Assembly (NCBI GenBank): GCA_965603825.1
Contig: CBFDEM010000053.1
Coordinates: 868,001-932,000 of the forward strand
DNA: 64,000 nucleotides
Origin: Blepharisma stoltei ATCC 30299
Taxonomy: Eukaryota > Protista > Ciliophora
Reading direction: 5' to 3'
The stretch's first letter is position 1. Each line of letters starts with the position of its first letter. A program made the position numbers and the translations under genes. Positions 39,662-51,451 of the stretch are shown piece after piece. The notes below the pieces were generated by a model. It did not search any database. It worked only from the letters and a program-made list of their open reading frames with translations, and was not told where the DNA came from.

Positions 39662-42286
39662 ATGGAAATACCTCTTGGGTCTCTTGGAGAGTTTCTTGAT
39701 TTATCTTTTACCACAACAAAAACACGTGCACAAACTGCAAAAACAGAGCCTTTTTCAAACTCTTATCGCCAGGCACACGGAAGGCAGTATTCAGGAGCAG
39801 CAACTACCCCAACAGCCAAGCCAAGCGCAAAGCAGTATTTCTCTACAAATAGCCGGTCATTCCACAATATAAAAGCAGATAACTCTAATGAGGGCTACTG
39901 TTTCACAAATTCAATTAAGCTTGCTCATGAAAGAGTTAGGCTGCAATCTCAGCAGCAGCCTCGTCCTATGACTCGGGGTGTTACGCTCAAAGCTCGACCC
40001 AAAACGACAGAGTCTAAAAATTCAAAAAAAACTACAGTTACAAAAAAAGTAGAAGAAGACGCTACCAAGCCTTTAGAAGAGCTAGAAAACAACGTTAGAA
40101 GTGAATTACAGTAAAATTCATATAGAATGCGGGCTAATCATTTTTTGATTAGGACGATGAAAAGAGAACAAGCGCTTATAAACCAGGCAGGCGTCGTTAA
40201 ACAGTCTACATCTGATAACTTGTTTTATGAACTTGCAGGGCATGTGATGAATATTCATAAAGAAGAAACAAGGGCAAAAACCCCAGATAATAATCATTAT
40301 AAGCCGACTTTAAATAATCTGAGCTTTGAATCTGCCCAACAAAAGCTTGCACAGAGCTCTATTGATTTTTGACTGAAAAAGAGAGGGATTGGGAAAGAGA
40401 CGAAATATGATTTAAACCATTTTTCTACAGCTCTTTTTGAGCAGCTTGATATAAATGGAGTCGGGTATTTAGAAGGAGAAGCCGTTTTACAGTCTTTATT
40501 AAGACTAGGAATTGCTACTGATCCTACCATACTGAGAAAAACGCTTGGGCTTAGTTTCCGCACGAATTCTTTAAAAACGCTAAAAATCCATCTGCATGAT
40601 TTTAAAACACTTTTTAAGTCAGACGGGAGAACTAATTCTATATTGACAAGAATGAATGAGCTTTCCCTTGAAGAAAGAGAAAATAAATCAAGAAGAACCT
40701 CAAAAACTGAAAGGAATTCTGACTATGAAGACGATAGCTCAATAATAAGCAGCAAAGGAAATAAAAAAGAAAGCTGATTTAAGCTGTTTAAAATTGGATT
40801 TGGAAGGCAGCTCACTGGCAGTGATTTTGGGAAGAAAAAATTAGACTCTATTGTCACCATAAACGAGCACGAAGATTTAATTAAAAAATGATGAAAAGAA
40901 ATAGACCCTAATGAGAAAAACCAGGTCACCATAAATGAAGTTGCATTAAAATTAGCTGAGCTAAAATTCGCACCTAATCGGAATGAGTCTAAAAGGATAA
41001 TTTATGGAATAATCGGTATAAAATCACATGTGAGCAACACTCAATTTCATCAAATTTTCGCAAAAAGTATGCTGATAGGTTCTTTATTAAATTTATCAAA
41101 TAGGCTATTTGAAGAAAATTCAAACCCTTCTACCGCAAATTCTCTTAAAATTTCTTCATATCAGAGATCATTAATAATGTCTGGGATAAGATGCCCGAAT
41201 TCTGATATTTCAATTGAAGAAGGCTCCAACACCATAAAAGCAGTCGAAAAATATCAAATTCAAGCAGAAGGACAAATTATTAAAGTTGACCCTGATGAGC
41301 TCCGTTCCAAAATGCTAAAACTCGCTGGAATTTCAGAAATTGAAGCAAATCAGCGTTCTTCTTCAATGAAACATTACAGAAAATTATCTGGTGAAATAAA
41401 AGGAATTTCTGAAAATTTTTTCCATCAAAAATCAAGCACTTTGCAATCTCCTATAAAAATTGAAAATTCTCAATCAATAATTGAAGAGCCTAAAGATATA
41501 CAAGAAATTTCAGATGAGGAGTTAAGGACTGATAAAGAATCTGAAGAAGGAATTTTTACTCACAAGTCCTCAATGAGGAGGTCTAGCGCAATGTCAAGCA
41601 AAAGGTCTAACCATTCGCGTCAAGAAGTGGAAATAAGGATTGGAAAAGAAGACCATATTGAAATGGAAACCACAACGGAAAAGGCAAAATTTTATAAATC
41701 GCATATAAAACCAAAACAAATTGTGGAGGCTAATATAACACCTAGCAATCATGGGTCAAGATTGTCTAAAGTTTTTGATAAAATACGTTGGGGTGCTAAA
41801 GTATATAGAAGATTTTCTAGTAGATTGCCTCCTTCTGAAGAGCCAGCAGTTTCTAAAAGCATTTCTCCTATATTAAAAGATATTAAAGAGACGAGAAGGG
41901 AAAAAAGGTCACAGAGCTTTACAAAGACTGAGGCTGGTATGGTCGGCATAACGTATAATTTTGCAAGTTTAATAAGTAAAATTGCTTCACAACCGAAACA
42001 AGAGATAAAAGAGACAGAAATTCTGAGACCAGTAGAGAAAGATGAAGAGATAAAGGAAAAACCAAAAGAAAGTGCAAGTGAAATTCATTGGAAGGATAGC
42101 TCTTTTCTGATAGTTGAAGAGGCTCCGAAAGAAAAAAGACTATTTCTACCAAGCAGAGAAGAGTATTTTAGGAGGCTTAAGGCAAAAGAAGATTCGAAAA
42201 AAAGATCTGAGGCTCAGTCTGATCTTTTGAAAAATTATCAAAACATGGTATTTCATGTTCCTGAAAATAAAAATTTTGTAAATTAA
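39662..42286 (+). CDS. Hypothetical protein with degenerate EF-hand-like segments, one 15-nt intron
   Basis: Removing intron 40111-40125 and reading TGA as Trp gives one frame; LFEQLDINGVGYLE is EF-hand-like. Confidence 0.72.
40111..40125 (+). other. 15-nt spliceosomal intron GTAAAATTCATATAG
   Basis: GT-AG, A at position 10, removes an in-frame TAA. Confidence 0.85.
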
Positions 42287-42567
42287 TTATTTATATGGCT
42301 ATATACCCATGTAAAAGAAATAGTTTTTTAATTTTTGAAATATAAGTACTTCTTCATTTAAACATATGTTTATTTATTTTAAAATTCTTTATTTATGCTA
42401 TCTATAAAATTGACCAAATCTAATTTGAATTACAAAATATAACGAATTAATTTATGTATTTTATATTCTATTTTTTTAAAATTTAAATAGCAATAAATGA
42501 AGAATATATCTTAACTTTTTATTAATAAGAGAAATTACTAAATCATAATTTACTTTAATTTTTAGAA

Positions 42568-42878
42568 GATGACGAGCGATGAATAGTTCCGGAGTGACTC
42601 GTAAGTTGATCCCAGCCTCAGGTAAGCAGATCCCATTCTTTTACAGACGATAAACAGAAGGCGCAAAGCTCGCTCATACTTCTTGGAAGTAATTTTTACG
42701 CTTGATAAGGCACGTTAGCCCAGAATGAGGCAGTGGGCACTTCCCCCATGCCCGAGCACTAGCATTGCTAAGAGAGTGTTTTGTCACAGAGTTGACCCGC
42801 TGATATAATAATTGTTTTGGTGGCACGAACAAGAAAAAGTGTAATGTGAAACCAGGGGACTAGTATCACTAGAGCTCT
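42568..42878 (+). promoter_or_regulatory. GC-elevated, hairpin- and uORF-rich region upstream of the Myb gene (long 5' leader or unidentified ncRNA)
   Basis: Sharp compositional contrast with the AT-rich flank; several ATG-initiated short ORFs; stem-loops; consensus-like splice donors. Confidence 0.45.
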
Positions 42879-43543
42879 ATGCCATATGAGCTTGATGATG
42901 AAGGGCTGTGGATGGTCCCTTGTAAAATAAATAGAGTATTCCGAAAATACTATCCTCTTTGTCGTCCTTATATTAATGATGGAAATAACAGCATCGGCAT
43001 CCCTGAACACAAAGGGAAGACGAAATCTTAATAGAGCTTATCAACCAAAAAGGCCCAAAGCGTTGAAAATCAATTGCTCAAAGCTTAAATGAAAAATTAC
43101 ATAGAGGTAAAGAATTTCGACTCGGTAAACAATGCAGAGAGCGCTGATACAACCATCTTAATCCTAACCTAAAAAAAGGCGAATGGTCCTTAGAAGAAGA
43201 CATCAAAATTCTTGCACTTCAAAAGAAGTTCGGAAACAGATGAAGCCTTATTTCAAGAGAATTAAAAGGAAGGACAGAAAATAGCGTTAAAAATAGATGA
43301 AAAAGTATTTTTAAAAAATCCAAAAAAGGAGACGCCAGTGTCGAAGAGATTGTTGGAGATATCAAAGAAGAAAAAGGAGGGGAAATTGGAGAGGGAAGTG
43401 GTGAGTTTAATAGTGGCTGGGAAAATGATGAGATAAATAATGTGGAAGAATCATACGGGTATGAGCTAGATAATCGGATGAAATATGAAGAAAATTCTGA
43501 AGAAAACTCCGAGCACTCTCCTACCTCATTTTTATATATGTAA
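42879..43543 (+). CDS. R2R3 Myb transcription factor with a -1 frame break at about 42989-43003
   Basis: N-terminus MPYELDDEGLWMVPCK.. is in one frame; HP(W)TQRED..GPKR(W)KSIA..GKQCRER(W)YNHLNP..WSLEED..FGNR(W)SLIS..GRTENSVKNR(W) is in the -1 frame. Confidence 0.85.
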
Positions 43544-43586
43544 ACCCTTAAATTTATGAAAATAAAAGGGGGATATATAAATAATA

Positions 43587-43793
43587 ATGGCTCGATCCAA
43601 AACATCAACGAGAAAGCTTCCAACTAGAAAAACTCCAAGGAAGCATTTAGCTACAAGAGTTGCAGTGAAAAAGACATTTGAAGCAACTGTTATAGACAAG
43701 GGAAAAAAAACGAAAAAAAGAGTTAAAAAGGATTCTGGCTCAGAACAAGAAGAAGAAGAGAAAGAATCAGATTTAGAAGCAGAAGAAGACTAA
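43587..43793 (+). CDS. Histone H3 tail-only mini-protein (68 aa; H3 residues 1-27-like, then basic and acidic tails)
   Basis: MARSKTSTRKLPTRKTPRKHLATRVAVKK aligns without gaps to H3 [27 protein letters not shown]; no histone fold; ATG to TAA with AT-rich flanks. Confidence 0.8.
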   Translation: MARSKTSTRKLPTRKTPRKHLATRVAVKKTFEATVIDKGKKTKKRVKKDSGSEQEEEEKESDLEAEED

Positions 43794-43929
43794 TTGATAT
43801 ATAACTTTAATATATTCAGATTTTTAAATTAAGCAAAATCTATTATAATAACTAAAAGTCTCATAATTTGTATTATTTTATAAAATGATATTTATTAAAG
43901 CTTCATTGAATTATTTATAAATATCCTAA

Positions 43930-44943
43930 ATGAGCTTTTTGAAAAGGATACTTTCCAAAATTTACCAACAAGCCAGTAAGATATATTCAGAGTACCCCGA
44001 TGAAGGCTTCTCACGCAACTCTATAAAGGTCCTATTCGCATTTACTATGCTCCCTATAATCTACTCACTAAAAGGCACAGACAAAAACACAAAATACGTC
44101 CTCTCATTATCAAGAAGCTGCTCTCGAATCTACGGCGCGGCTTTCAGAATCCCAATCCCTCAGAATTGGCGTGCGTCCATTTATGGAGGATTTTCCTCAA
44201 TTTTTGGAGTCAATTTATCTGAAATTAAAAAGCCTATTACTGAATTTGAGACACTGAATGAATTTTTCGTAAGGGAAATAAAAGAAGACGCCAGGGTCAT
44301 TGGCAAAGGAGATTTGGTGTCCCCTTGTGACGGAAGAGTTATGAGCATGGGAATTGTGGAAAATAATAAAATTGACAGCGTTAAAGGGAGAGATTACTTA
44401 ATGACAAGGCTGCTTATAGGGACTGATGGGGTTAATTTTGATTGGTATGTGGACAGTGTTAAGAAAAATAAAGAAAATCAGCTTTATTATGTCAACCTCT
44501 ATTTGGCTCCTGGCGATTATCATAGATTCCATTCACCTACAGAGTGAAGAGTCTCTTTTAGAAGGCATATTTATGGGTATTTACTTGGTGTCTTTCCTTT
44601 GAACATATGGAGGAAAGGTGATGTGTTTACAATTAATGAAAGAGTAGCTTATTTTGGGGAATGAAAGCATGGGCTTTTCAATTATGTCGCTGTCGGAGCT
44701 TTTAATGTGGGATCAATTGAGGTGAATTTTGATAAAGAGCTAAAAACAAATTTGAAAAAATTTGAAAATCTTGAAAAAACTAATGATGAAATCAATATTG
44801 AAGGAGAATTCAAAAAAGGAGAAGAGTTTGGAAGGTTTAATACAGGATCGACCATTATTATGATTTTTGAAGCTCCTAAAGGGTTAGAGTGGACAATACA
44901 AAGAGGAGACAGAGTTTTATTAGGGCAGAATCTACTAAAATAA
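43930..44943 (+). CDS. PISD: Phosphatidylserine decarboxylase proenzyme (mitochondrial type)
   Basis: LNEFFVR, SPCDG, YLAPGDYHRFHSP, NERV, VGAFNVGSI, and the GRFNTGSTII self-cleavage motif; TGA=Trp. Confidence 0.93.
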
Positions 44944-45049
44944 ATTACTTATCATATCAAAGTTAAATAATTTCTTTGAATAAACTCAGAGTTATAATGA
45001 AAGAAGTAATAATATTAAAAATCTAATTTTGAATACTTAGAATATACTT

Positions 45050-45970
45050 TTATTTATTGTATTTGAGACTTCTCGCAGTGTATGGATCAATAAGATGATG
45101 AAGCAGATCCATAGTAAGCAGTGTAATAACTACATGTGGAGCTAACTTCATTACGAACAACGGAAATCCTGTGTATAATCTCCAAAAACCTTCTGATTTC
45201 AAGCTTTTCCTTACACAATCAATAAACCCTTTATATTTAAAAGTTCCATCAGGGCCTATTTCCATTCTCTGGTACTTTACTTTAATATTATCAAACGGCA
45301 TTGCAACAATGCACGACAAAGTTGCAGCCAAAACTGAGCTGAAAAATCTATGTGACGGATTTTCCTCAAAACTGGTCATAAAATGCTCATTAGATTCATC
45401 ATATGTTGCAAGCATTGTAAAATTAATTATCATTGCCCTCAAGATTGTGGGCACTGAGCCTTTCCAAAACGTAAAAATCCCTTCTTCTTTAATCATTTTT
45501 CTCTGGGCATCAAAAATGCCGGAATACTGTTTATGGTCGTAGCGGAGCCTTACCATAGTAAGATCGAGAGGATTTACAAGAAAAGAAGCTAAACCACCTG
45601 AAAAAATAGAATAAAACGCTTTTTTAACAAATGGGATTGTAGGCTGGCCTGAGTGCTCTTTGTCGTGGTCACTCAGAGTTTTATATAATCCAATACGGGT
45701 TGTGGAATAAATGGCTTGCCGATGGATTGCTGGATGAATGCCTGAGTAAAACTTTTTGATTCCTTTCTCTTTTAATATACGTTGGGCGAAATGTAATGGC
45801 TTCTCGTAGTCACCTCTGTGTCCTTCTGCTAATCCTTGAATTTTAACTTTTACGTAGTCGACTGGTAGAATAACGATTGTTCCGATTACTCCTGCGAATC
45901 CACCAATAAGGAAGTTATTTACGTGATTGGCATATCTTAGGTGGTCAAGTTCTGGATTATAAGCTTTCAT
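45050..45970 (-). CDS. Mitochondrial carrier (2-oxoglutarate/malate, DTC-like)
   Basis: Three PxD..K/R repeats; RQAIYSTTRIGLY, PTILRAM, MLATYD. Confidence 0.9.
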   Translation of the reverse strand: MKAYNPELDHLRYANHVNNFLIGGFAGVIGTIVILPVDYVKVKIQGLAEGHRGDYEKPLHFAQRILKEKGIKKFYSGIHPAIHRQAIYSTTRIGLYKTLSDHDKEHSGQPTIPFVKKAFYSIFSGGLASFLVNPLDLTMVRLRYDHKQYSGIFDAQRKMIKEEGIFTFWKGSVPTILRAMIINFTMLATYDESNEHFMTSFEENPSHRFFSSVLAATLSCIVAMPFDNIKVKYQRMEIGPDGTFKYKGFIDCVRKSLKSEGFWRLYTGFPLFVMKLAPHVVITLLTMDLLHHLIDPYTARSLKYNK

Positions 45971-46822
45971 TATAGTATAAACTATATATTAACCAGCTCC
46001 ATTACGATCTGAAAAGATATGGTATTATTGGTATTATTCAAAAAATTATGTAAAATTAATATCCAAGTTAAAGAAATTTAACAAATATTTAGAAAGGCAG
46101 ACCGAGGCAGCAATATTTAAACCGAAAATGATATAAGTTGCATTTTAAAAAATTGAGCTTCATAAAAAAATTTTAGTTTATGACGTCATCAATCATAGAA
46201 GTCAGAGAAATAATTCGCAGGCACTTTTTAATACAAGAACTCTTCATAAAGCTAATTTTGAGAGTCCTTTATTTTAATATTAAATTTGATGGCATTGCAA
46301 TAAACTTATTCGAATCTTCCAGCATTTTAATTAATTAAATTAAATTTCATAAAATTAATATATTGATAAGGAATATCTTTTTAAGTTATTATGCAATACA
46401 TGCAACTAAAGGCAATTATTGAATTACGAAAGATTTTCATTTACAAGATCTTAGGAAGAAACAAAGAGCTGTATTATAAAAGACAAGTAAAAATTATTTC
46501 CTAATAATTAAAAGAAAATTTTCGAAATTAAATCTGATTCCTAACAAATTATTATTAAATTTTTGAGGTTGCCTGCTTGCTCATTGATACTAATTTCATC
46601 AAAATTATCATCCTTTATTTCTTAAACATTTTTTTAGCTTCATATACACTATCTTCATTAAGCTCTTTTAAATCTCTATAAAGACTGTATAGAAAAATAA
46701 AAGCGACTCATAACATCTATAATACAGTTTTTTATTAATTTGTGAGAGAGAGGCGTCTAACTGATACTTGAAAACATCTAATATAATTTCATTAAAATTA
46801 TAAACTAAATTTTCAATCAAAA

Positions 46823-50263: not shown

Positions 50264-51451
50264 TTATTTTAATTTTCCTGGTTTTTTTAATACATCATAA
50301 GAACTGATTTTGGGTCCGATTTCGACTTTTGGAATTAATGGGTCTTTACCAGGATTTGCTATTCGAGCTCTGCTTTTAGGCGATTGTGGCCTTTTGCTTG
50401 GAGCTGTAATTGGCCTTTTTATTTTGGAACTTGAGCTTTTATCGGCTGTTTTTTCTTTTATTTTTAGTCCGAAATTATTGGTCAGCTTTCCTGCCGGCGT
50501 TATTTGGACTTTTTTAGGAATCGGTTGATTATTAGGCATGTCAAAATATTCCCTTTTAGTTAGCTTCGTTTCTTCAGGAGCATACACTTGAGACAATTTA
50601 GCTCCTTTTGGTGCAAGATTGTCCTCGTTGTTCAAGGTTTGAGAATTGTATGAACTTGGATTATTTTCTCCTTTTTTTCCTTTTCGTTTAGGCTTTTCAG
50701 CGGCTTGGGATACTAAAGGTGCTCTAGCTTCTTTAGTGCTTCCTTTAATGCACGATTTCAAAATAACATAGCCATTCTCTATCGGATTTTTAACATTTGG
50801 CTGGATATCTACAGCTTTCCCAGACCAATTAATTCTCGGATCTCTTGGCCCTCCATCTCCGCTTGGCCTTGCCTCAACTGCAGCCCCTACTTGTGAGTTC
50901 AAGAAAGTATTTCTCAATATCAATTCTTCCACATCTTCAATTTCTTTTTCATTATCATTCCAATTTCTCGATCTTGGCCCTTCACCCTGTCTGACAAGTC
51001 TATTTTCAAATGCAGCTAATTGATTAACAAAATTTGGCTTTATATCTAAGTCTGGTCTCCTCGAGTAAAGAAATTCCAGCGCTTTATTTAAGCCTCACTT
51101 GTATCGTTTTATTAAATAAGCTGAAACAATGGCTGCGGATCTCGAAACTCCTCTGACAGAATGAACAAGTGTGCTTTCGCCTTCTTTTAAAGCTTGCTCT
51201 ATAAAGTTGTAAATCGCAGAAATATTTTTGTCGTTGGAGTCTAATAAGACTTGAGAGTCATGGTCAAGTCAAGAAAAAGAAATATATCGTACACCGATCG
51301 GCTCCCAATGATTTGGAACCTGTCGTGCCGCGCAGTTTATGATGTGAGTAACCTTGTTGGCTACAACGAATTCTAAGTCTTGAGCTGCAAATTCATCACC
51401 GATAAAAAGACCGTCTTTGACTTTAATAGCACCTATTAGTGTTGTTTCCAT
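50264..51451 (-). CDS. Dual-specificity phosphatase-like protein with catalytic Cys replaced by Ser (pseudophosphatase)
   Basis: GLFIGD, VTHIINCA, LVHSVRGVSRSA, YK(W)..AL, RRP..IKPNFVNQL; TGA=Trp. Confidence 0.87.

What the first reader, a model, noticed from the sequence alone, without database searches (positions are those of the whole stretch)
43587..43793. A free-standing histone H3 tail: 68-aa mini-protein with no histone fold (candidate histone-mark decoy)
Seen: ARSKTSTRKLPTRKTPRKHLATRVAVK aligns without gaps to H3 residues 1-27 at 14 of 27 identities. K4, K9, K14, K18 and K27 are all kept at their H3 positions, while the phospho-acceptors S10 and S28 are lost. The tail is followed by an NLS-like basic patch (KKTKKRVKK) and an acidic end (EQEEEEKESDLEAEED), then TAA and an AT-rich spacer with no room for a histone fold. 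Known: in ciliates H3K9/K27 methylation marks germline DNA for elimination, and histone mimics can titrate readers and writers. Inference: a soluble H3-tail decoy or substrate, whose acidic end might bind histones or fold back on the tail, possibly tuning developmental chromatin.
Basis: partly seen in the sequence, partly recalled or inferred. Interest (0 to 1): 0.9.

Follow-up and report, generated by a model that had tools for sequence, protein, structure and literature searches.

The report
Free-standing histone H3 tail gene family
A ciliate (Blepharisma stoltei) carries two old, transcribed and selectively maintained mini-genes that encode only the modifiable N-terminal tail of histone H3, followed by a basic patch and an acidic end, which makes a naturally encoded 'loose histone tail' available for testing as a chromatin regulator.

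Summary
Window 43587-43793 (+) is a 68-codon ORF. Its first ~28-36 residues are homologous to the H3 N-terminal tail, and no histone fold lies in any frame nearby.

New evidence makes it a real gene, not a relic:
- **Transcription.** RNA-derived contigs cover the ORF as a separate piece in 3 of 4 runs. A 15-nt intron is spliced out of the next gene, so these runs are RNA.
- **A second copy.** An 80-aa paralogue with the same three-part design lies on contig C5, in an old colinear duplicated block (neighbour dS 1.3-2.0), again just downstream of a Myb-like gene. The scan had noted that copy separately (s1-664903).
- **Selection.** At that divergence a neutral copy keeps its ATG and open frame in ≤0.6% of simulations, and ≥16/27 H3-tail identities in ≤0.03%. 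pN (0.49) is below pS (0.73).
- **H3 ancestry.** The tail carries Blepharisma-specific H3 residues (P11, T15, H19). Both mini-genes share a rare GGGGG[AC] upstream element with one H3 subtype.

No orthologue was found outside this genome. The published H3 inventory, built on fold models, does not list them.

Function is untested. The most likely role is a disordered nuclear H3-tail mimic (competitor or substrate). The scan also noted another H3-tail motif elsewhere in this genome (s1-646642).

The parts
43568..43573 (+). GGGGGA upstream element, 19 nt before the ATG. The paralogue has it at -24, and the two L005/L006-type H3 genes have GGGGGC at -27.
   Evidence: Upstream sequences printed. 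GGGGG[AC] occurs only twice on the + strand of the 64-kb window. Genome-wide, the motif-plus-ATG pattern has 310 hits against 98 for the control.
43587..43793 (+). Complete coding sequence of the 68-aa H3-tail-only protein (mini1), ATG to TAA.
   Evidence: RNA contigs lie at 43591-43783 (X1), 43590-43790 (X2) and 43601-43790 (X4). The gene model is present in the protein collection as P0001.
43587..43673 (+). H3-tail homology segment (Met + H3 residues 1-28). A1-R2-S3-K4, K9, K14-T15-P16, K18-H19-L20-A21-T22, A25 and K27 match the organism's own H3. Profile-level homology runs on to about residue 36-43.
   Evidence: Neutral simulation.
43698..43730 (+). Lysine-rich basic patch K38-K48 (NLS-like). 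The middle segment, residues 29-48, has net charge +7.
   Evidence: charge blocks. The paralogue has an equivalent patch with net +8.
43731..43790 (+). Acidic C-terminal end D49-D68, net charge -11, with CK2-type Ser at 50, 52 and 61. It contains the best-conserved C-terminal motif, SE[QS]EEEE[KL][EP]SD[LF], at 43740-43775.
   Evidence: The paralogue's C-terminal block has net -10. The first Ser of the motif uses TCA here and AGT in the paralogue (sequence).
43151..43543 (+). Last exon of the upstream Myb-like gene, ending ...SPTSFLYM then TAA. It is the synteny anchor: its paralogue sits in the same position upstream of mini2 on contig C5.
   Evidence: 98/124 aa identical, pS 0.655, dS 1.55.
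43930..44943 (+). Downstream phosphatidylserine-decarboxylase-like gene. Its 15-nt intron, 43976-43990, is removed in the X1 and X2 contigs, which shows the runs are RNA. It has no partner in the C5 block.

Best explanation
This is a genuine, expressed small gene. It is one of two ancient paralogues in Blepharisma stoltei that descend from a histone H3 gene. They encode only the H3 N-terminal tail, fused to a Lys-rich patch and an acidic, Ser-containing end. The proteins are about 7.8 and 8.9 kDa and are predicted to be disordered.

**Shown:**
- The ORF is real.
- It has H3-tail ancestry.
- It lacks a histone fold.
- It is transcribed.
- A syntenic paralogue exists.
- Purifying selection acts on both the open frame and the tail residues.

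**Inferred:**
- After removal of the initiator Met, the protein exposes an authentic H3 N-terminus (A-R-S/T-K).
- It also carries Lys at the H3 positions 4, 9, 14, 18 and 27.
- It enters the nucleus through the H3-tail NLS and/or the basic patch.
- There it engages the factors that normally bind or modify nucleosomal H3 tails: PHD-type readers of the free N-terminus, acetyl- and methyl-transferases, and histone karyopherins. It would act as a soluble competitor or substrate, that is, a tail mimic.
- The conserved acidic motif either masks the basic tail in cis or docks the protein onto histones.
- CK2-type phosphorylation could tune this.
For: **ORF and tail homology.**

**Own-lineage H3 residues.** P11, T15 and H19 are shared with the organism's H3 and not with canonical H3.

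**No fold.**

**Transcription.**
- Separate contigs cover almost the whole CDS in 3 of 4 runs.
- Contigs break in the intergenic gaps on both sides.
- The neighbour's 15-nt intron is removed.

**Paralogue.**
- It is an 80-aa protein with the same charge blocks: +10/+8/-10 against +10/+7/-11.
- It lies in a colinear duplicated block, again downstream of the Myb paralogue.
- It is annotated as 'unnamed protein product [Blepharisma stoltei]'.

**Selection.**
- Neighbouring gene pairs have dS 1.3-2.0.
- The mini pair has pS 0.73 against pN 0.49, Fisher p 0.009.
- In neutral simulations the ATG and open frame are kept in 0.1-0.6% of runs.
- At least 16/27 tail identities (mini1) are kept in ≤3e-4 of runs, and at least 21/33 (mini2) in <1e-4.
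- A 20-nt, 90% match spans the start codon, while the rest of the flanks are unalignable.

**Shared upstream element.** A GGGGG[AC] element is shared with the L005/L006 H3 subtype.

**Disorder.** The ESM Atlas model has mean pLDDT 0.39.

**H3TM rules.** M-A-R-x-K satisfies the three sequence rules defined for H3 N-terminal mimicry proteins (PMC8166343).
Against: - No protein-level evidence exists: no mass spectrometry and no ribosome profiling.
- The RNA evidence is from assembled contigs only. It gives no strand, no ends and no expression level. One run joins the 5' part of the ORF to the upstream gene's transcript.
- RNA support for the paralogue could not be checked.
- No orthologue was found outside this genome. 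The selection argument therefore rests on one paralogue pair, near-saturated dS and a substitution-only simulation.
- The mini pair evolves about 3-5 times faster at non-synonymous sites than its neighbours (dN 0.79 against 0.15-0.27).
- The K9 context is not conserved between the copies, and K23 is Arg in both.
- The mimic or competitor function is inference from sequence alone.
Confidence: 0.55

Rival explanations
1. It is a real, selected protein, but the H3 ancestry is incidental. On this reading it works through its charge pattern (basic N-terminal two-thirds, acidic C-terminus) as a small disordered chromatin or histone-chaperone-like protein, in the manner of prothymosin-alpha or HMGN. 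For example, the acidic motif would bind H2A-H2B or H3-H4 and the basic part would bind DNA or RNA.
For: - The charge blocks are almost exactly conserved between the paralogues, while only 41% of residues are identical.
- The best-conserved C-terminal element is an acidic run followed by S-D-[L/F]. From my own knowledge, and untested here, this resembles the acidic-plus-hydrophobic histone-binding motifs of chaperones.
- The tail is not clearly more conserved than the rest: pN 0.43 against 0.53.
Against: - The positions conserved in both copies within the tail are almost all the ancestral H3 residues, 12 of 14.
- These include the non-charged T15-P16, L20-A21 and A25, and the exact N-terminus A-R-S/T-K.
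- Lys, not Arg, is kept at positions 4, 9, 14, 18 and 27 in both copies, although K-to-R swaps occurred at 17 and 23.
Confidence: 0.22
2. It is a transcribed but functionless relic: the 5' fragment of a duplicated H3 gene that lost its fold and has not yet decayed.
For: - It is short, has low complexity and diverges fast.
- It has no orthologues in the databases.
- RNA depth is low, k-mer depth 4-9 against 58-84 for the next gene, and the tool warns that depth is a poor measure.
- The published work states that RNA-seq covers almost the whole of this compact genome.
Against: - Two copies are kept intact across a duplication with dS 1.3-2.0, while several neighbouring genes were lost from one block or the other.
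- Neutral retention of the ATG and frame occurs in ≤0.6% of simulations per copy, and retention of tail identity in ≤0.03%.
- pN is below pS.
- There is no recent gene conversion from H3: the longest DNA matches are 10-26 nt.
- The contigs break in the flanking intergenic DNA, so the signal is not uniform background.
Confidence: 0.1
3. It is the first exon of a longer gene, joined by splicing or stop-codon read-through to a histone fold or another domain.
For: Contigs drop rare isoforms, so absence of a joint is not proof. Some heterotrichs do reassign stop codons.
Against: - There is no H3-fold remnant in any frame within 42500-45000, nor around the paralogue.
- No GT lies near the stop.
- A second in-frame stop follows 12 codons later.
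- The RNA contigs are colinear with the genome up to 43790.
- TAA ends the neighbouring genes, and only TGA is reassigned in this species.
- Both paralogues end at the same point of the acidic block although their downstream genes differ.
Confidence: 0.03

Closest known systems
Canonical histone H3 of the same organism (L005/L006 type, 137 aa)
   Same: - The first ~28-36 residues are homologous: 16/27 identical for mini1 and 21/33 for the paralogue.
- The shared residues include lineage-specific ones.
- They share the same start context and an upstream GGGGG[AC] element.
   Different: - The histone fold is entirely absent, so the protein cannot form a nucleosome.
- The fold is replaced by a Lys-rich patch and an acidic tail. 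These show no detectable similarity to any frame of H3 genes.
H3 N-terminal mimicry proteins (H3TMs; Chen et al. 2021, PMC8166343)
   Same: The N-terminus reads Met-Ala-Arg-x-Lys. After Met removal, A1, R2 and K4 are therefore presented as in H3. Those human proteins bind H3K4me3/me0 reader domains in vitro.
   Different: - H3TMs are unrelated, larger proteins that share only about 4 residues by convergence.
- Here the whole ~30-residue tail is retained by descent from an H3 gene, and it makes up nearly half of a free-standing protein.
Short-motif histone mimics (G9a ARKT automethylation site, influenza NS1 ARSK, SARS-CoV-2 ORF8 ARKS; reviewed in PMC6028506)
   Same: A non-nucleosomal protein displays H3-tail sequence that could engage readers and writers.
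   Different: - Those are 4-6-residue motifs inside viral or enzyme proteins.
- The ARK[ST] context at K9 is not kept here (TRKL and GSKP).
- Here the mimicry is endogenous, extended and ancestral.
EZHIP/CATACOMB and JARID2 K116 (endogenous H3K27-like peptides that inhibit or activate PRC2; my own knowledge, not checked here)
   Same: These are endogenous proteins that regulate a histone methyltransferase through an H3K27-like peptide; EZHIP is largely disordered and lineage-restricted. The paralogue keeps the exact own-H3 K27 context, A-K-K-V-S-A.
   Different: - EZHIP has Met in place of K27 and acts as an inhibitor. Here Lys is kept, so the protein is substrate-like.
- There is no sequence relationship to these proteins.
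- The effect on PRC2/Ezl1 is untested.
Prothymosin-alpha / HMGN-type small disordered chromatin proteins (my own knowledge)
   Same: They are small and disordered, with a segregated basic/acidic charge pattern, and are likely nuclear.
   Different: There is no sequence homology. None of these proteins carries a histone tail.

Membership tests
Histone H3 / core histone family (Pfam PF00125) | Histone fold (three helices, alpha1-L1-alpha2-L2-alpha3) that pairs with H4 | tested here: not met
   Pfam finds no family even at E ≤ 10. tblastn with three own H3 proteins finds only residues 1-61 or 1-39 of the tail and nothing of the fold in any frame of window 42500-45000. The same holds around the paralogue. 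The ORF ends after 68 codons.
Histone H3 / core histone family (Pfam PF00125) | H3-type N-terminal tail (A-R-T-K ... K9 ... K14 ... K18 ... K27) starting at residue 1 | tested here: met
   The alignment starts at Met1 and is gapless for mini1. It gives 16/27 identities to the own H3 and 14/27 to canonical H3.
H3 N-terminal mimicry proteins (H3TM, PMC8166343) | Sequence rules: the initiator Met is removable (small residue Ala next), Arg at position 2 and Lys at position 4 of the mature protein | tested here: met
   M-A-R-S-K in mini1 and M-A-R-T-K in the paralogue. The rules are as stated in the abstract read.
H3 N-terminal mimicry proteins (H3TM, PMC8166343) | Binding to PHD/Tudor effector domains, and K4 methylation by H3K4 methyltransferases | not testable with these tools
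   Needs peptide arrays, ITC or in-vitro methylation.
ARKS-type histone mimics (G9a, NS1, ORF8) | A-R-K-[S/T] motif around the methylatable lysine | tested here: not met
   At K9, mini1 has T-R-K-L and the paralogue has G-S-K-P, whereas the own H3 has A-R-K-T.
EZHIP-like PRC2 inhibitors | H3K27M-like peptide with Met (or another non-Lys residue) at the K27 position | tested here: not met
   Both copies keep Lys at the K27-equivalent position.
Acidic histone-chaperone motifs (acidic run plus hydrophobic anchor) | Acidic stretch followed by an aromatic or hydrophobic anchor residue that binds H2A-H2B or H3-H4 | tested here: inconclusive
   A conserved SE[QS]EEEE[KL][EP]SD[LF] motif is present in both copies. 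No binding prediction or assay was run.

The most novel reading that the evidence does not exclude
Blepharisma encodes histone H3 tails as separate, diffusible gene products that form part of its chromatin-marking system. The tail-only proteins would be methylated or acetylated like H3. They would then tune the Ezl1/PRC2-type K9/K27 methylation and its readers, buffering or allosterically feeding them, during small-RNA-guided DNA elimination. Alternatively, they would be delivered through their acidic motif to nucleosomes built from this genome's two H3-fold variants that lack a canonical tail (L015, L016). That would supply an H3 tail in trans, a 'split histone'.
Probability: 0.1. Interest if true: 0.93.

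Novelty: new variant of a known kind. Interest (0 to 1): 0.74.

Why it matters
Histone-tail mimicry is known only as short convergent motifs inside viral proteins or chromatin enzymes. Here an entire H3 tail has been split off from its histone by gene duplication. It has been kept as an independent protein in two copies for a long time, in an organism that uses H3 marks to decide which DNA to delete.

If it acts as a soluble tail, it is a natural experiment on what a histone tail does off the nucleosome: titrating readers and writers, nuclear import, or marks carried in trans.

It also shows that histone inventories based on fold models miss such genes. The published count of eleven H3 genes for this species was made with domain models.

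Tried and rejected
**Orthologue searches (all blank).**
- The word-indexed search of 5.8 billion proteins with mini1 found only itself.
- The same search with the two-sequence profile found only the two Blepharisma proteins.
- Exhaustive phmmer over 1.84 billion representatives found only mini1 itself.
- For a 68-aa low-complexity query these blanks are weak evidence of absence. No heterotrich genome other than this one was reachable.

**Other searches without result.**
- Pfam gave no family.
- ESM Atlas gave no usable feature hit. Its structure neighbours are meaningless because the model is disordered, pLDDT 0.39.
- A profile search of the own genome for a third member found none.
- The look-up of encoding contigs for both proteins returned nothing, because records of this genome are withheld.

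**Origin of the C-terminal half.** I tested whether it arose from a frameshifted H3 fold. Local alignments to all three frames of three H3 genes score no better than shuffles, so this was rejected.

**GGGGGM element.** I asked whether it is a histone-specific promoter element. Genome-wide it precedes an ATG about 310 times against 98 for the control. It is therefore not specific. It counts only as modest support (roughly 1 gene in 80) for shared 5' ancestry or regulation with the L005/L006 H3 subtype.

**Expression level and stage.** These could not be obtained, because read laying returned contigs only.

**Steps not run.**
- No complex prediction was run. No specific binding partner is claimed, and a pass for an A-R-S-K N-terminus in a PHD finger would be nearly trivial.
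- One simulation timed out and was rewritten.

Full report
**1. The observation.**
- Window 43587-43793 (+) is an ATG-to-TAA ORF of 68 codons.
- An in-frame TAA lies two codons before the ATG.
- The upstream Myb-like gene ends at 43543 and the next gene starts at 43930.
- No GT is available near the stop to start one of this genome's tiny introns. A second in-frame stop follows 12 codons later.
- Residues 2-28 align without gaps to canonical H3 1-27 at 14/27, as shown in the HMMER alignment to PDB H3 chains.
- Against the organism's own H3 the figure is 16/27.
- Pfam sees nothing.
- tblastn with three own H3 proteins finds only the tail and no trace of the fold in any frame of 42500-45000.
- The similarity is beyond chance:
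  - Six-frame searches of the whole 41.5-Mb genome connect the ORF only with H3 N-termini (E 0.002-0.009).
  - A profile of the ORF and its paralogue hits the own H3 tails at E about 1e-5 from residue 1.
  - The same profile hits practically only histone H3 among 177,635 PDB sequences, best E 4e-4.
The own H3 has T10 and V28/S29, so 'loss of S28' is a lineage trait, not a feature of the mini-protein.

**2. Organism and context.**
- The window is G000:C53:868001-932000 of a 41.46-Mb, 64-contig assembly.
- TGA reads as Trp and introns are 15 nt.
- The paralogue is named 'unnamed protein product [Blepharisma stoltei]' by NCBI/UniRef.
- That paper counted eleven H3 genes using HistoneDB fold models. 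It describes two VIT-VWA-H3 fusions. The text read here mentions no tail-only genes.

**3. Transcription.**
- Four runs from one 2022 study hold the locus.
- They are RNA. The 15-nt intron 43976-43990 of the downstream phosphatidylserine-decarboxylase-like gene is removed in the X1 and X2 contigs. The contigs also break in intergenic DNA.
- The mini-ORF is covered by its own short contigs: 43591-43783 in X1, 43590-43790 in X2 and 43601-43790 in X4.
- These are separate from the upstream gene's contigs, which end at 43544-43566. They are also separate from the downstream gene's contigs, which start at 43925 (X1, X2) or 44052-44060 (X3, X4).
- In X3 one contig runs from 42558 to 43660, so some read-through or UTR overlap exists across the 43-nt spacer.
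- Contigs give no strand, ends or level.
- No joint to another exon was seen.

**4. A second copy in a paralogous block.**
- Searching the genome with H3 revealed a further tail-only hit.
- It lies at L020:1414-1656 (-), which is G000:C5:782176-782418, and is an 80-aa ORF.
- It begins M-A-R-T-K-Q. It keeps K-T-P-x-K-x-L-A and the exact own-H3 stretch A-K-K-V-S-A-T-T.
- It continues with a Lys-rich patch and ends in an acidic, Ser-rich tail.
- Like mini1, it lies directly downstream of a Myb-like gene ending ...SPTSFLYM.
- tblastx shows that C5:772000-791999 (reverse complement) is colinear with window 29086-50459. Three further gene pairs, the Myb pair and one short distal match (window 50309-50461) are shared, and genes were lost differentially from each block.
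- The PSD-like gene and window 33.1-42.9 kb have no partner on C5. A DEAH-type helicase follows mini2.
- The two mini-proteins share 28/68 residues (41%).
- Their charge plan is almost identical: +10/+7/-11 against +10/+8/-10. They also share the motif SE[QS]EEEE[KL][EP]SD[LF].
- No third member exists in the genome.
- The scan's own notes list this second copy independently (s1-664903).

**5. Selection.**
- The neighbouring paralogue pairs have pS 0.62-0.70, dS 1.3-2.0 and dN 0.15-0.27. The duplication is therefore old and synonymous sites are near saturation.
- The mini pair has pS 0.73 and pN 0.49, Fisher p 0.009.
- Apart from the conserved end of the Myb gene, the only flanking DNA that aligns (E ≤ 0.002) is a 20-nt, 90% match across the start codon.
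- I ran substitution-only neutral simulations at half the block's dS per lineage (0.65-1.0 per site):
  - The ATG and open frame are kept in 0.2-0.6% of runs for mini1 and 0.1-0.3% for mini2.
  - At least 16/27 H3-tail identities are kept in ≤3e-4 of runs. At least 21/33 for mini2 are kept in <1e-4.
- Leaving out indels makes these figures conservative.
- Recent gene conversion from H3 is excluded. DNA matches to H3 genes are only 10-26 nt long, and synonymous positions differ in most shared codons.
- Caveats: there is one pair only, the sequence is low-complexity, dS is saturated, and the alignment was guided by the protein.
- The proteins evolve several-fold faster than their neighbours, as is usual for disordered proteins.

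**6. Origin.**
- The tails carry residues specific to this lineage's H3: P11, T15 and H19. The own H3 reads K-T-P-K-K-H-L-A where canonical H3 reads K-A-P-R-K-Q-L-A. The mini-genes therefore descend from a Blepharisma-lineage H3 gene and are not convergent mimics.
- Both mini-genes carry GGGGGA 19 and 24 nt before the ATG.
- The two L005/L006-type H3 genes carry GGGGGC at -27, in a similar A/T-rich context. The other H3 subtypes have different upstream motifs.
- The element is rare. It occurs twice on the + strand of the window. Genome-wide it precedes an ATG 310 times against 98 for the control, which is about 1 gene in 80. It is not histone-specific, so this is modest support for shared 5' ancestry or co-regulation.
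- The C-terminal half resembles no frame of any H3 gene.
- Because both copies share the C-terminal design and the synteny, the truncation predates the block duplication.

**7. What is conserved.**
- Within the tail, 14 of 28 aligned positions are identical between the copies. Twelve of those are the ancestral H3 residue: A1, R2, K4, K14(15), T, P, K18, L20, A21, A25 and K27, plus Met.
- K9 is also Lys in both copies when each tail is laid gaplessly on its matching H3 subtype (mini1 on L005, mini2 on L008; sequences).
- Lys is kept at positions 4, 9, 14, 18 and 27 in both. K17 became R in one and H in the other, and K23 is R in both.
- This hints that lysine identity matters, not only charge. 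The contrast is not statistically robust once K23 is counted as a modification site.
- The K9 context diverged (TRKL against GSKP). The K27 context is exact in mini2.
- The ESM Atlas model of mini1 is disordered, mean pLDDT 0.39.

**8. Mechanism and rivals.**
- Shown: a real, transcribed, selected, fold-less H3-tail protein family.
- Inferred: Met removal exposes A-R-S/T-K, and the three sequence rules for H3 N-terminal mimicry proteins are met (PMC8166343).
- Inferred: the protein is nuclear. It competes with, or serves as substrate for, factors that engage H3 tails. The acidic motif masks the tail or docks onto histones.
- I give this mimic reading about 0.55.
- Rivals:
  - A charge-pattern chromatin or chaperone-like protein whose H3 ancestry is incidental: 0.22.
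  - A transcribed relic: 0.10, disfavoured by section 5.
  - An exon of a longer gene: 0.03, disfavoured.

**9. Comparison with known systems.**
- It is not a member of the histone family, because the fold test fails.
- It behaves formally like an H3TM or histone mimic. It differs in being free-standing, extended over about 30 residues, and derived by descent from H3.
- It is not an ARKS-type mimic and not an EZHIP-type K27M mimic; both motifs were tested and are not met.
- Literature searches for histone mimics in ciliates, H3-tail mimics and Blepharisma histones found no description of a tail-only histone gene.

**10. Limits.**
- There is no protein evidence and no expression profile.
- There is no orthologue outside this genome.
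- RNA for the paralogue was not checked.
The zero depth over 45048-46500 may be an effect of the tool's filter and is not interpreted.

Noticed in passing
G000:C14:557682-557704 (+), locus L063: The only ARTKQTAR outside the H3 genes. It is internal, in the context [19 protein letters not shown], within an ankyrin-repeat ORF. It matches scan note s1-646642. The WGR/PARP part of that note was not checked.
   Followed up: partly
L015:1459-1827 (+) and L016 about 1450-1842 (-): Two H3-fold genes (122 aa and about 129 aa) whose short N-termini (MSKFVKEIEE..., MSKAVTSPQEK...) lack the canonical H3 tail. So the genome holds fold-without-tail variants alongside the tail-without-fold genes. Any link between them is speculative.
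   Followed up: no
window 29086-50459 against G000:C5:772000-791999: An old colinear paralogous block with differential gene loss (dS 1.3-2.0). H3 gene pairs on C28 and C54 suggest further such blocks. This may indicate an ancient large-scale duplication in Blepharisma.
   Followed up: partly
L005-L012, 120 nt upstream of the H3 start codons: H3 subtypes have distinct upstream motifs. L005/L006 have GGGGGC at -27. L008-L012 have a CCAAT-like 'gccaatca' or 'attggc' element plus 'agatt' and 'tgcga' boxes, and a conserved 3' element 'atc.cttaattac' just after the stop.
   Followed up: no
window 41270-41650: RNA contigs of run X4 differ from the genome at 4 positions each in pieces of 103 and 257 nt, and a matching contig is also present over 41621-41650. 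This probably reflects the second mating-type strain or allele in that sample.
   Followed up: no
window 45048-46500: No RNA contig was laid over the mitochondrial-carrier-like gene on the minus strand in any of the four runs.
   Followed up: no
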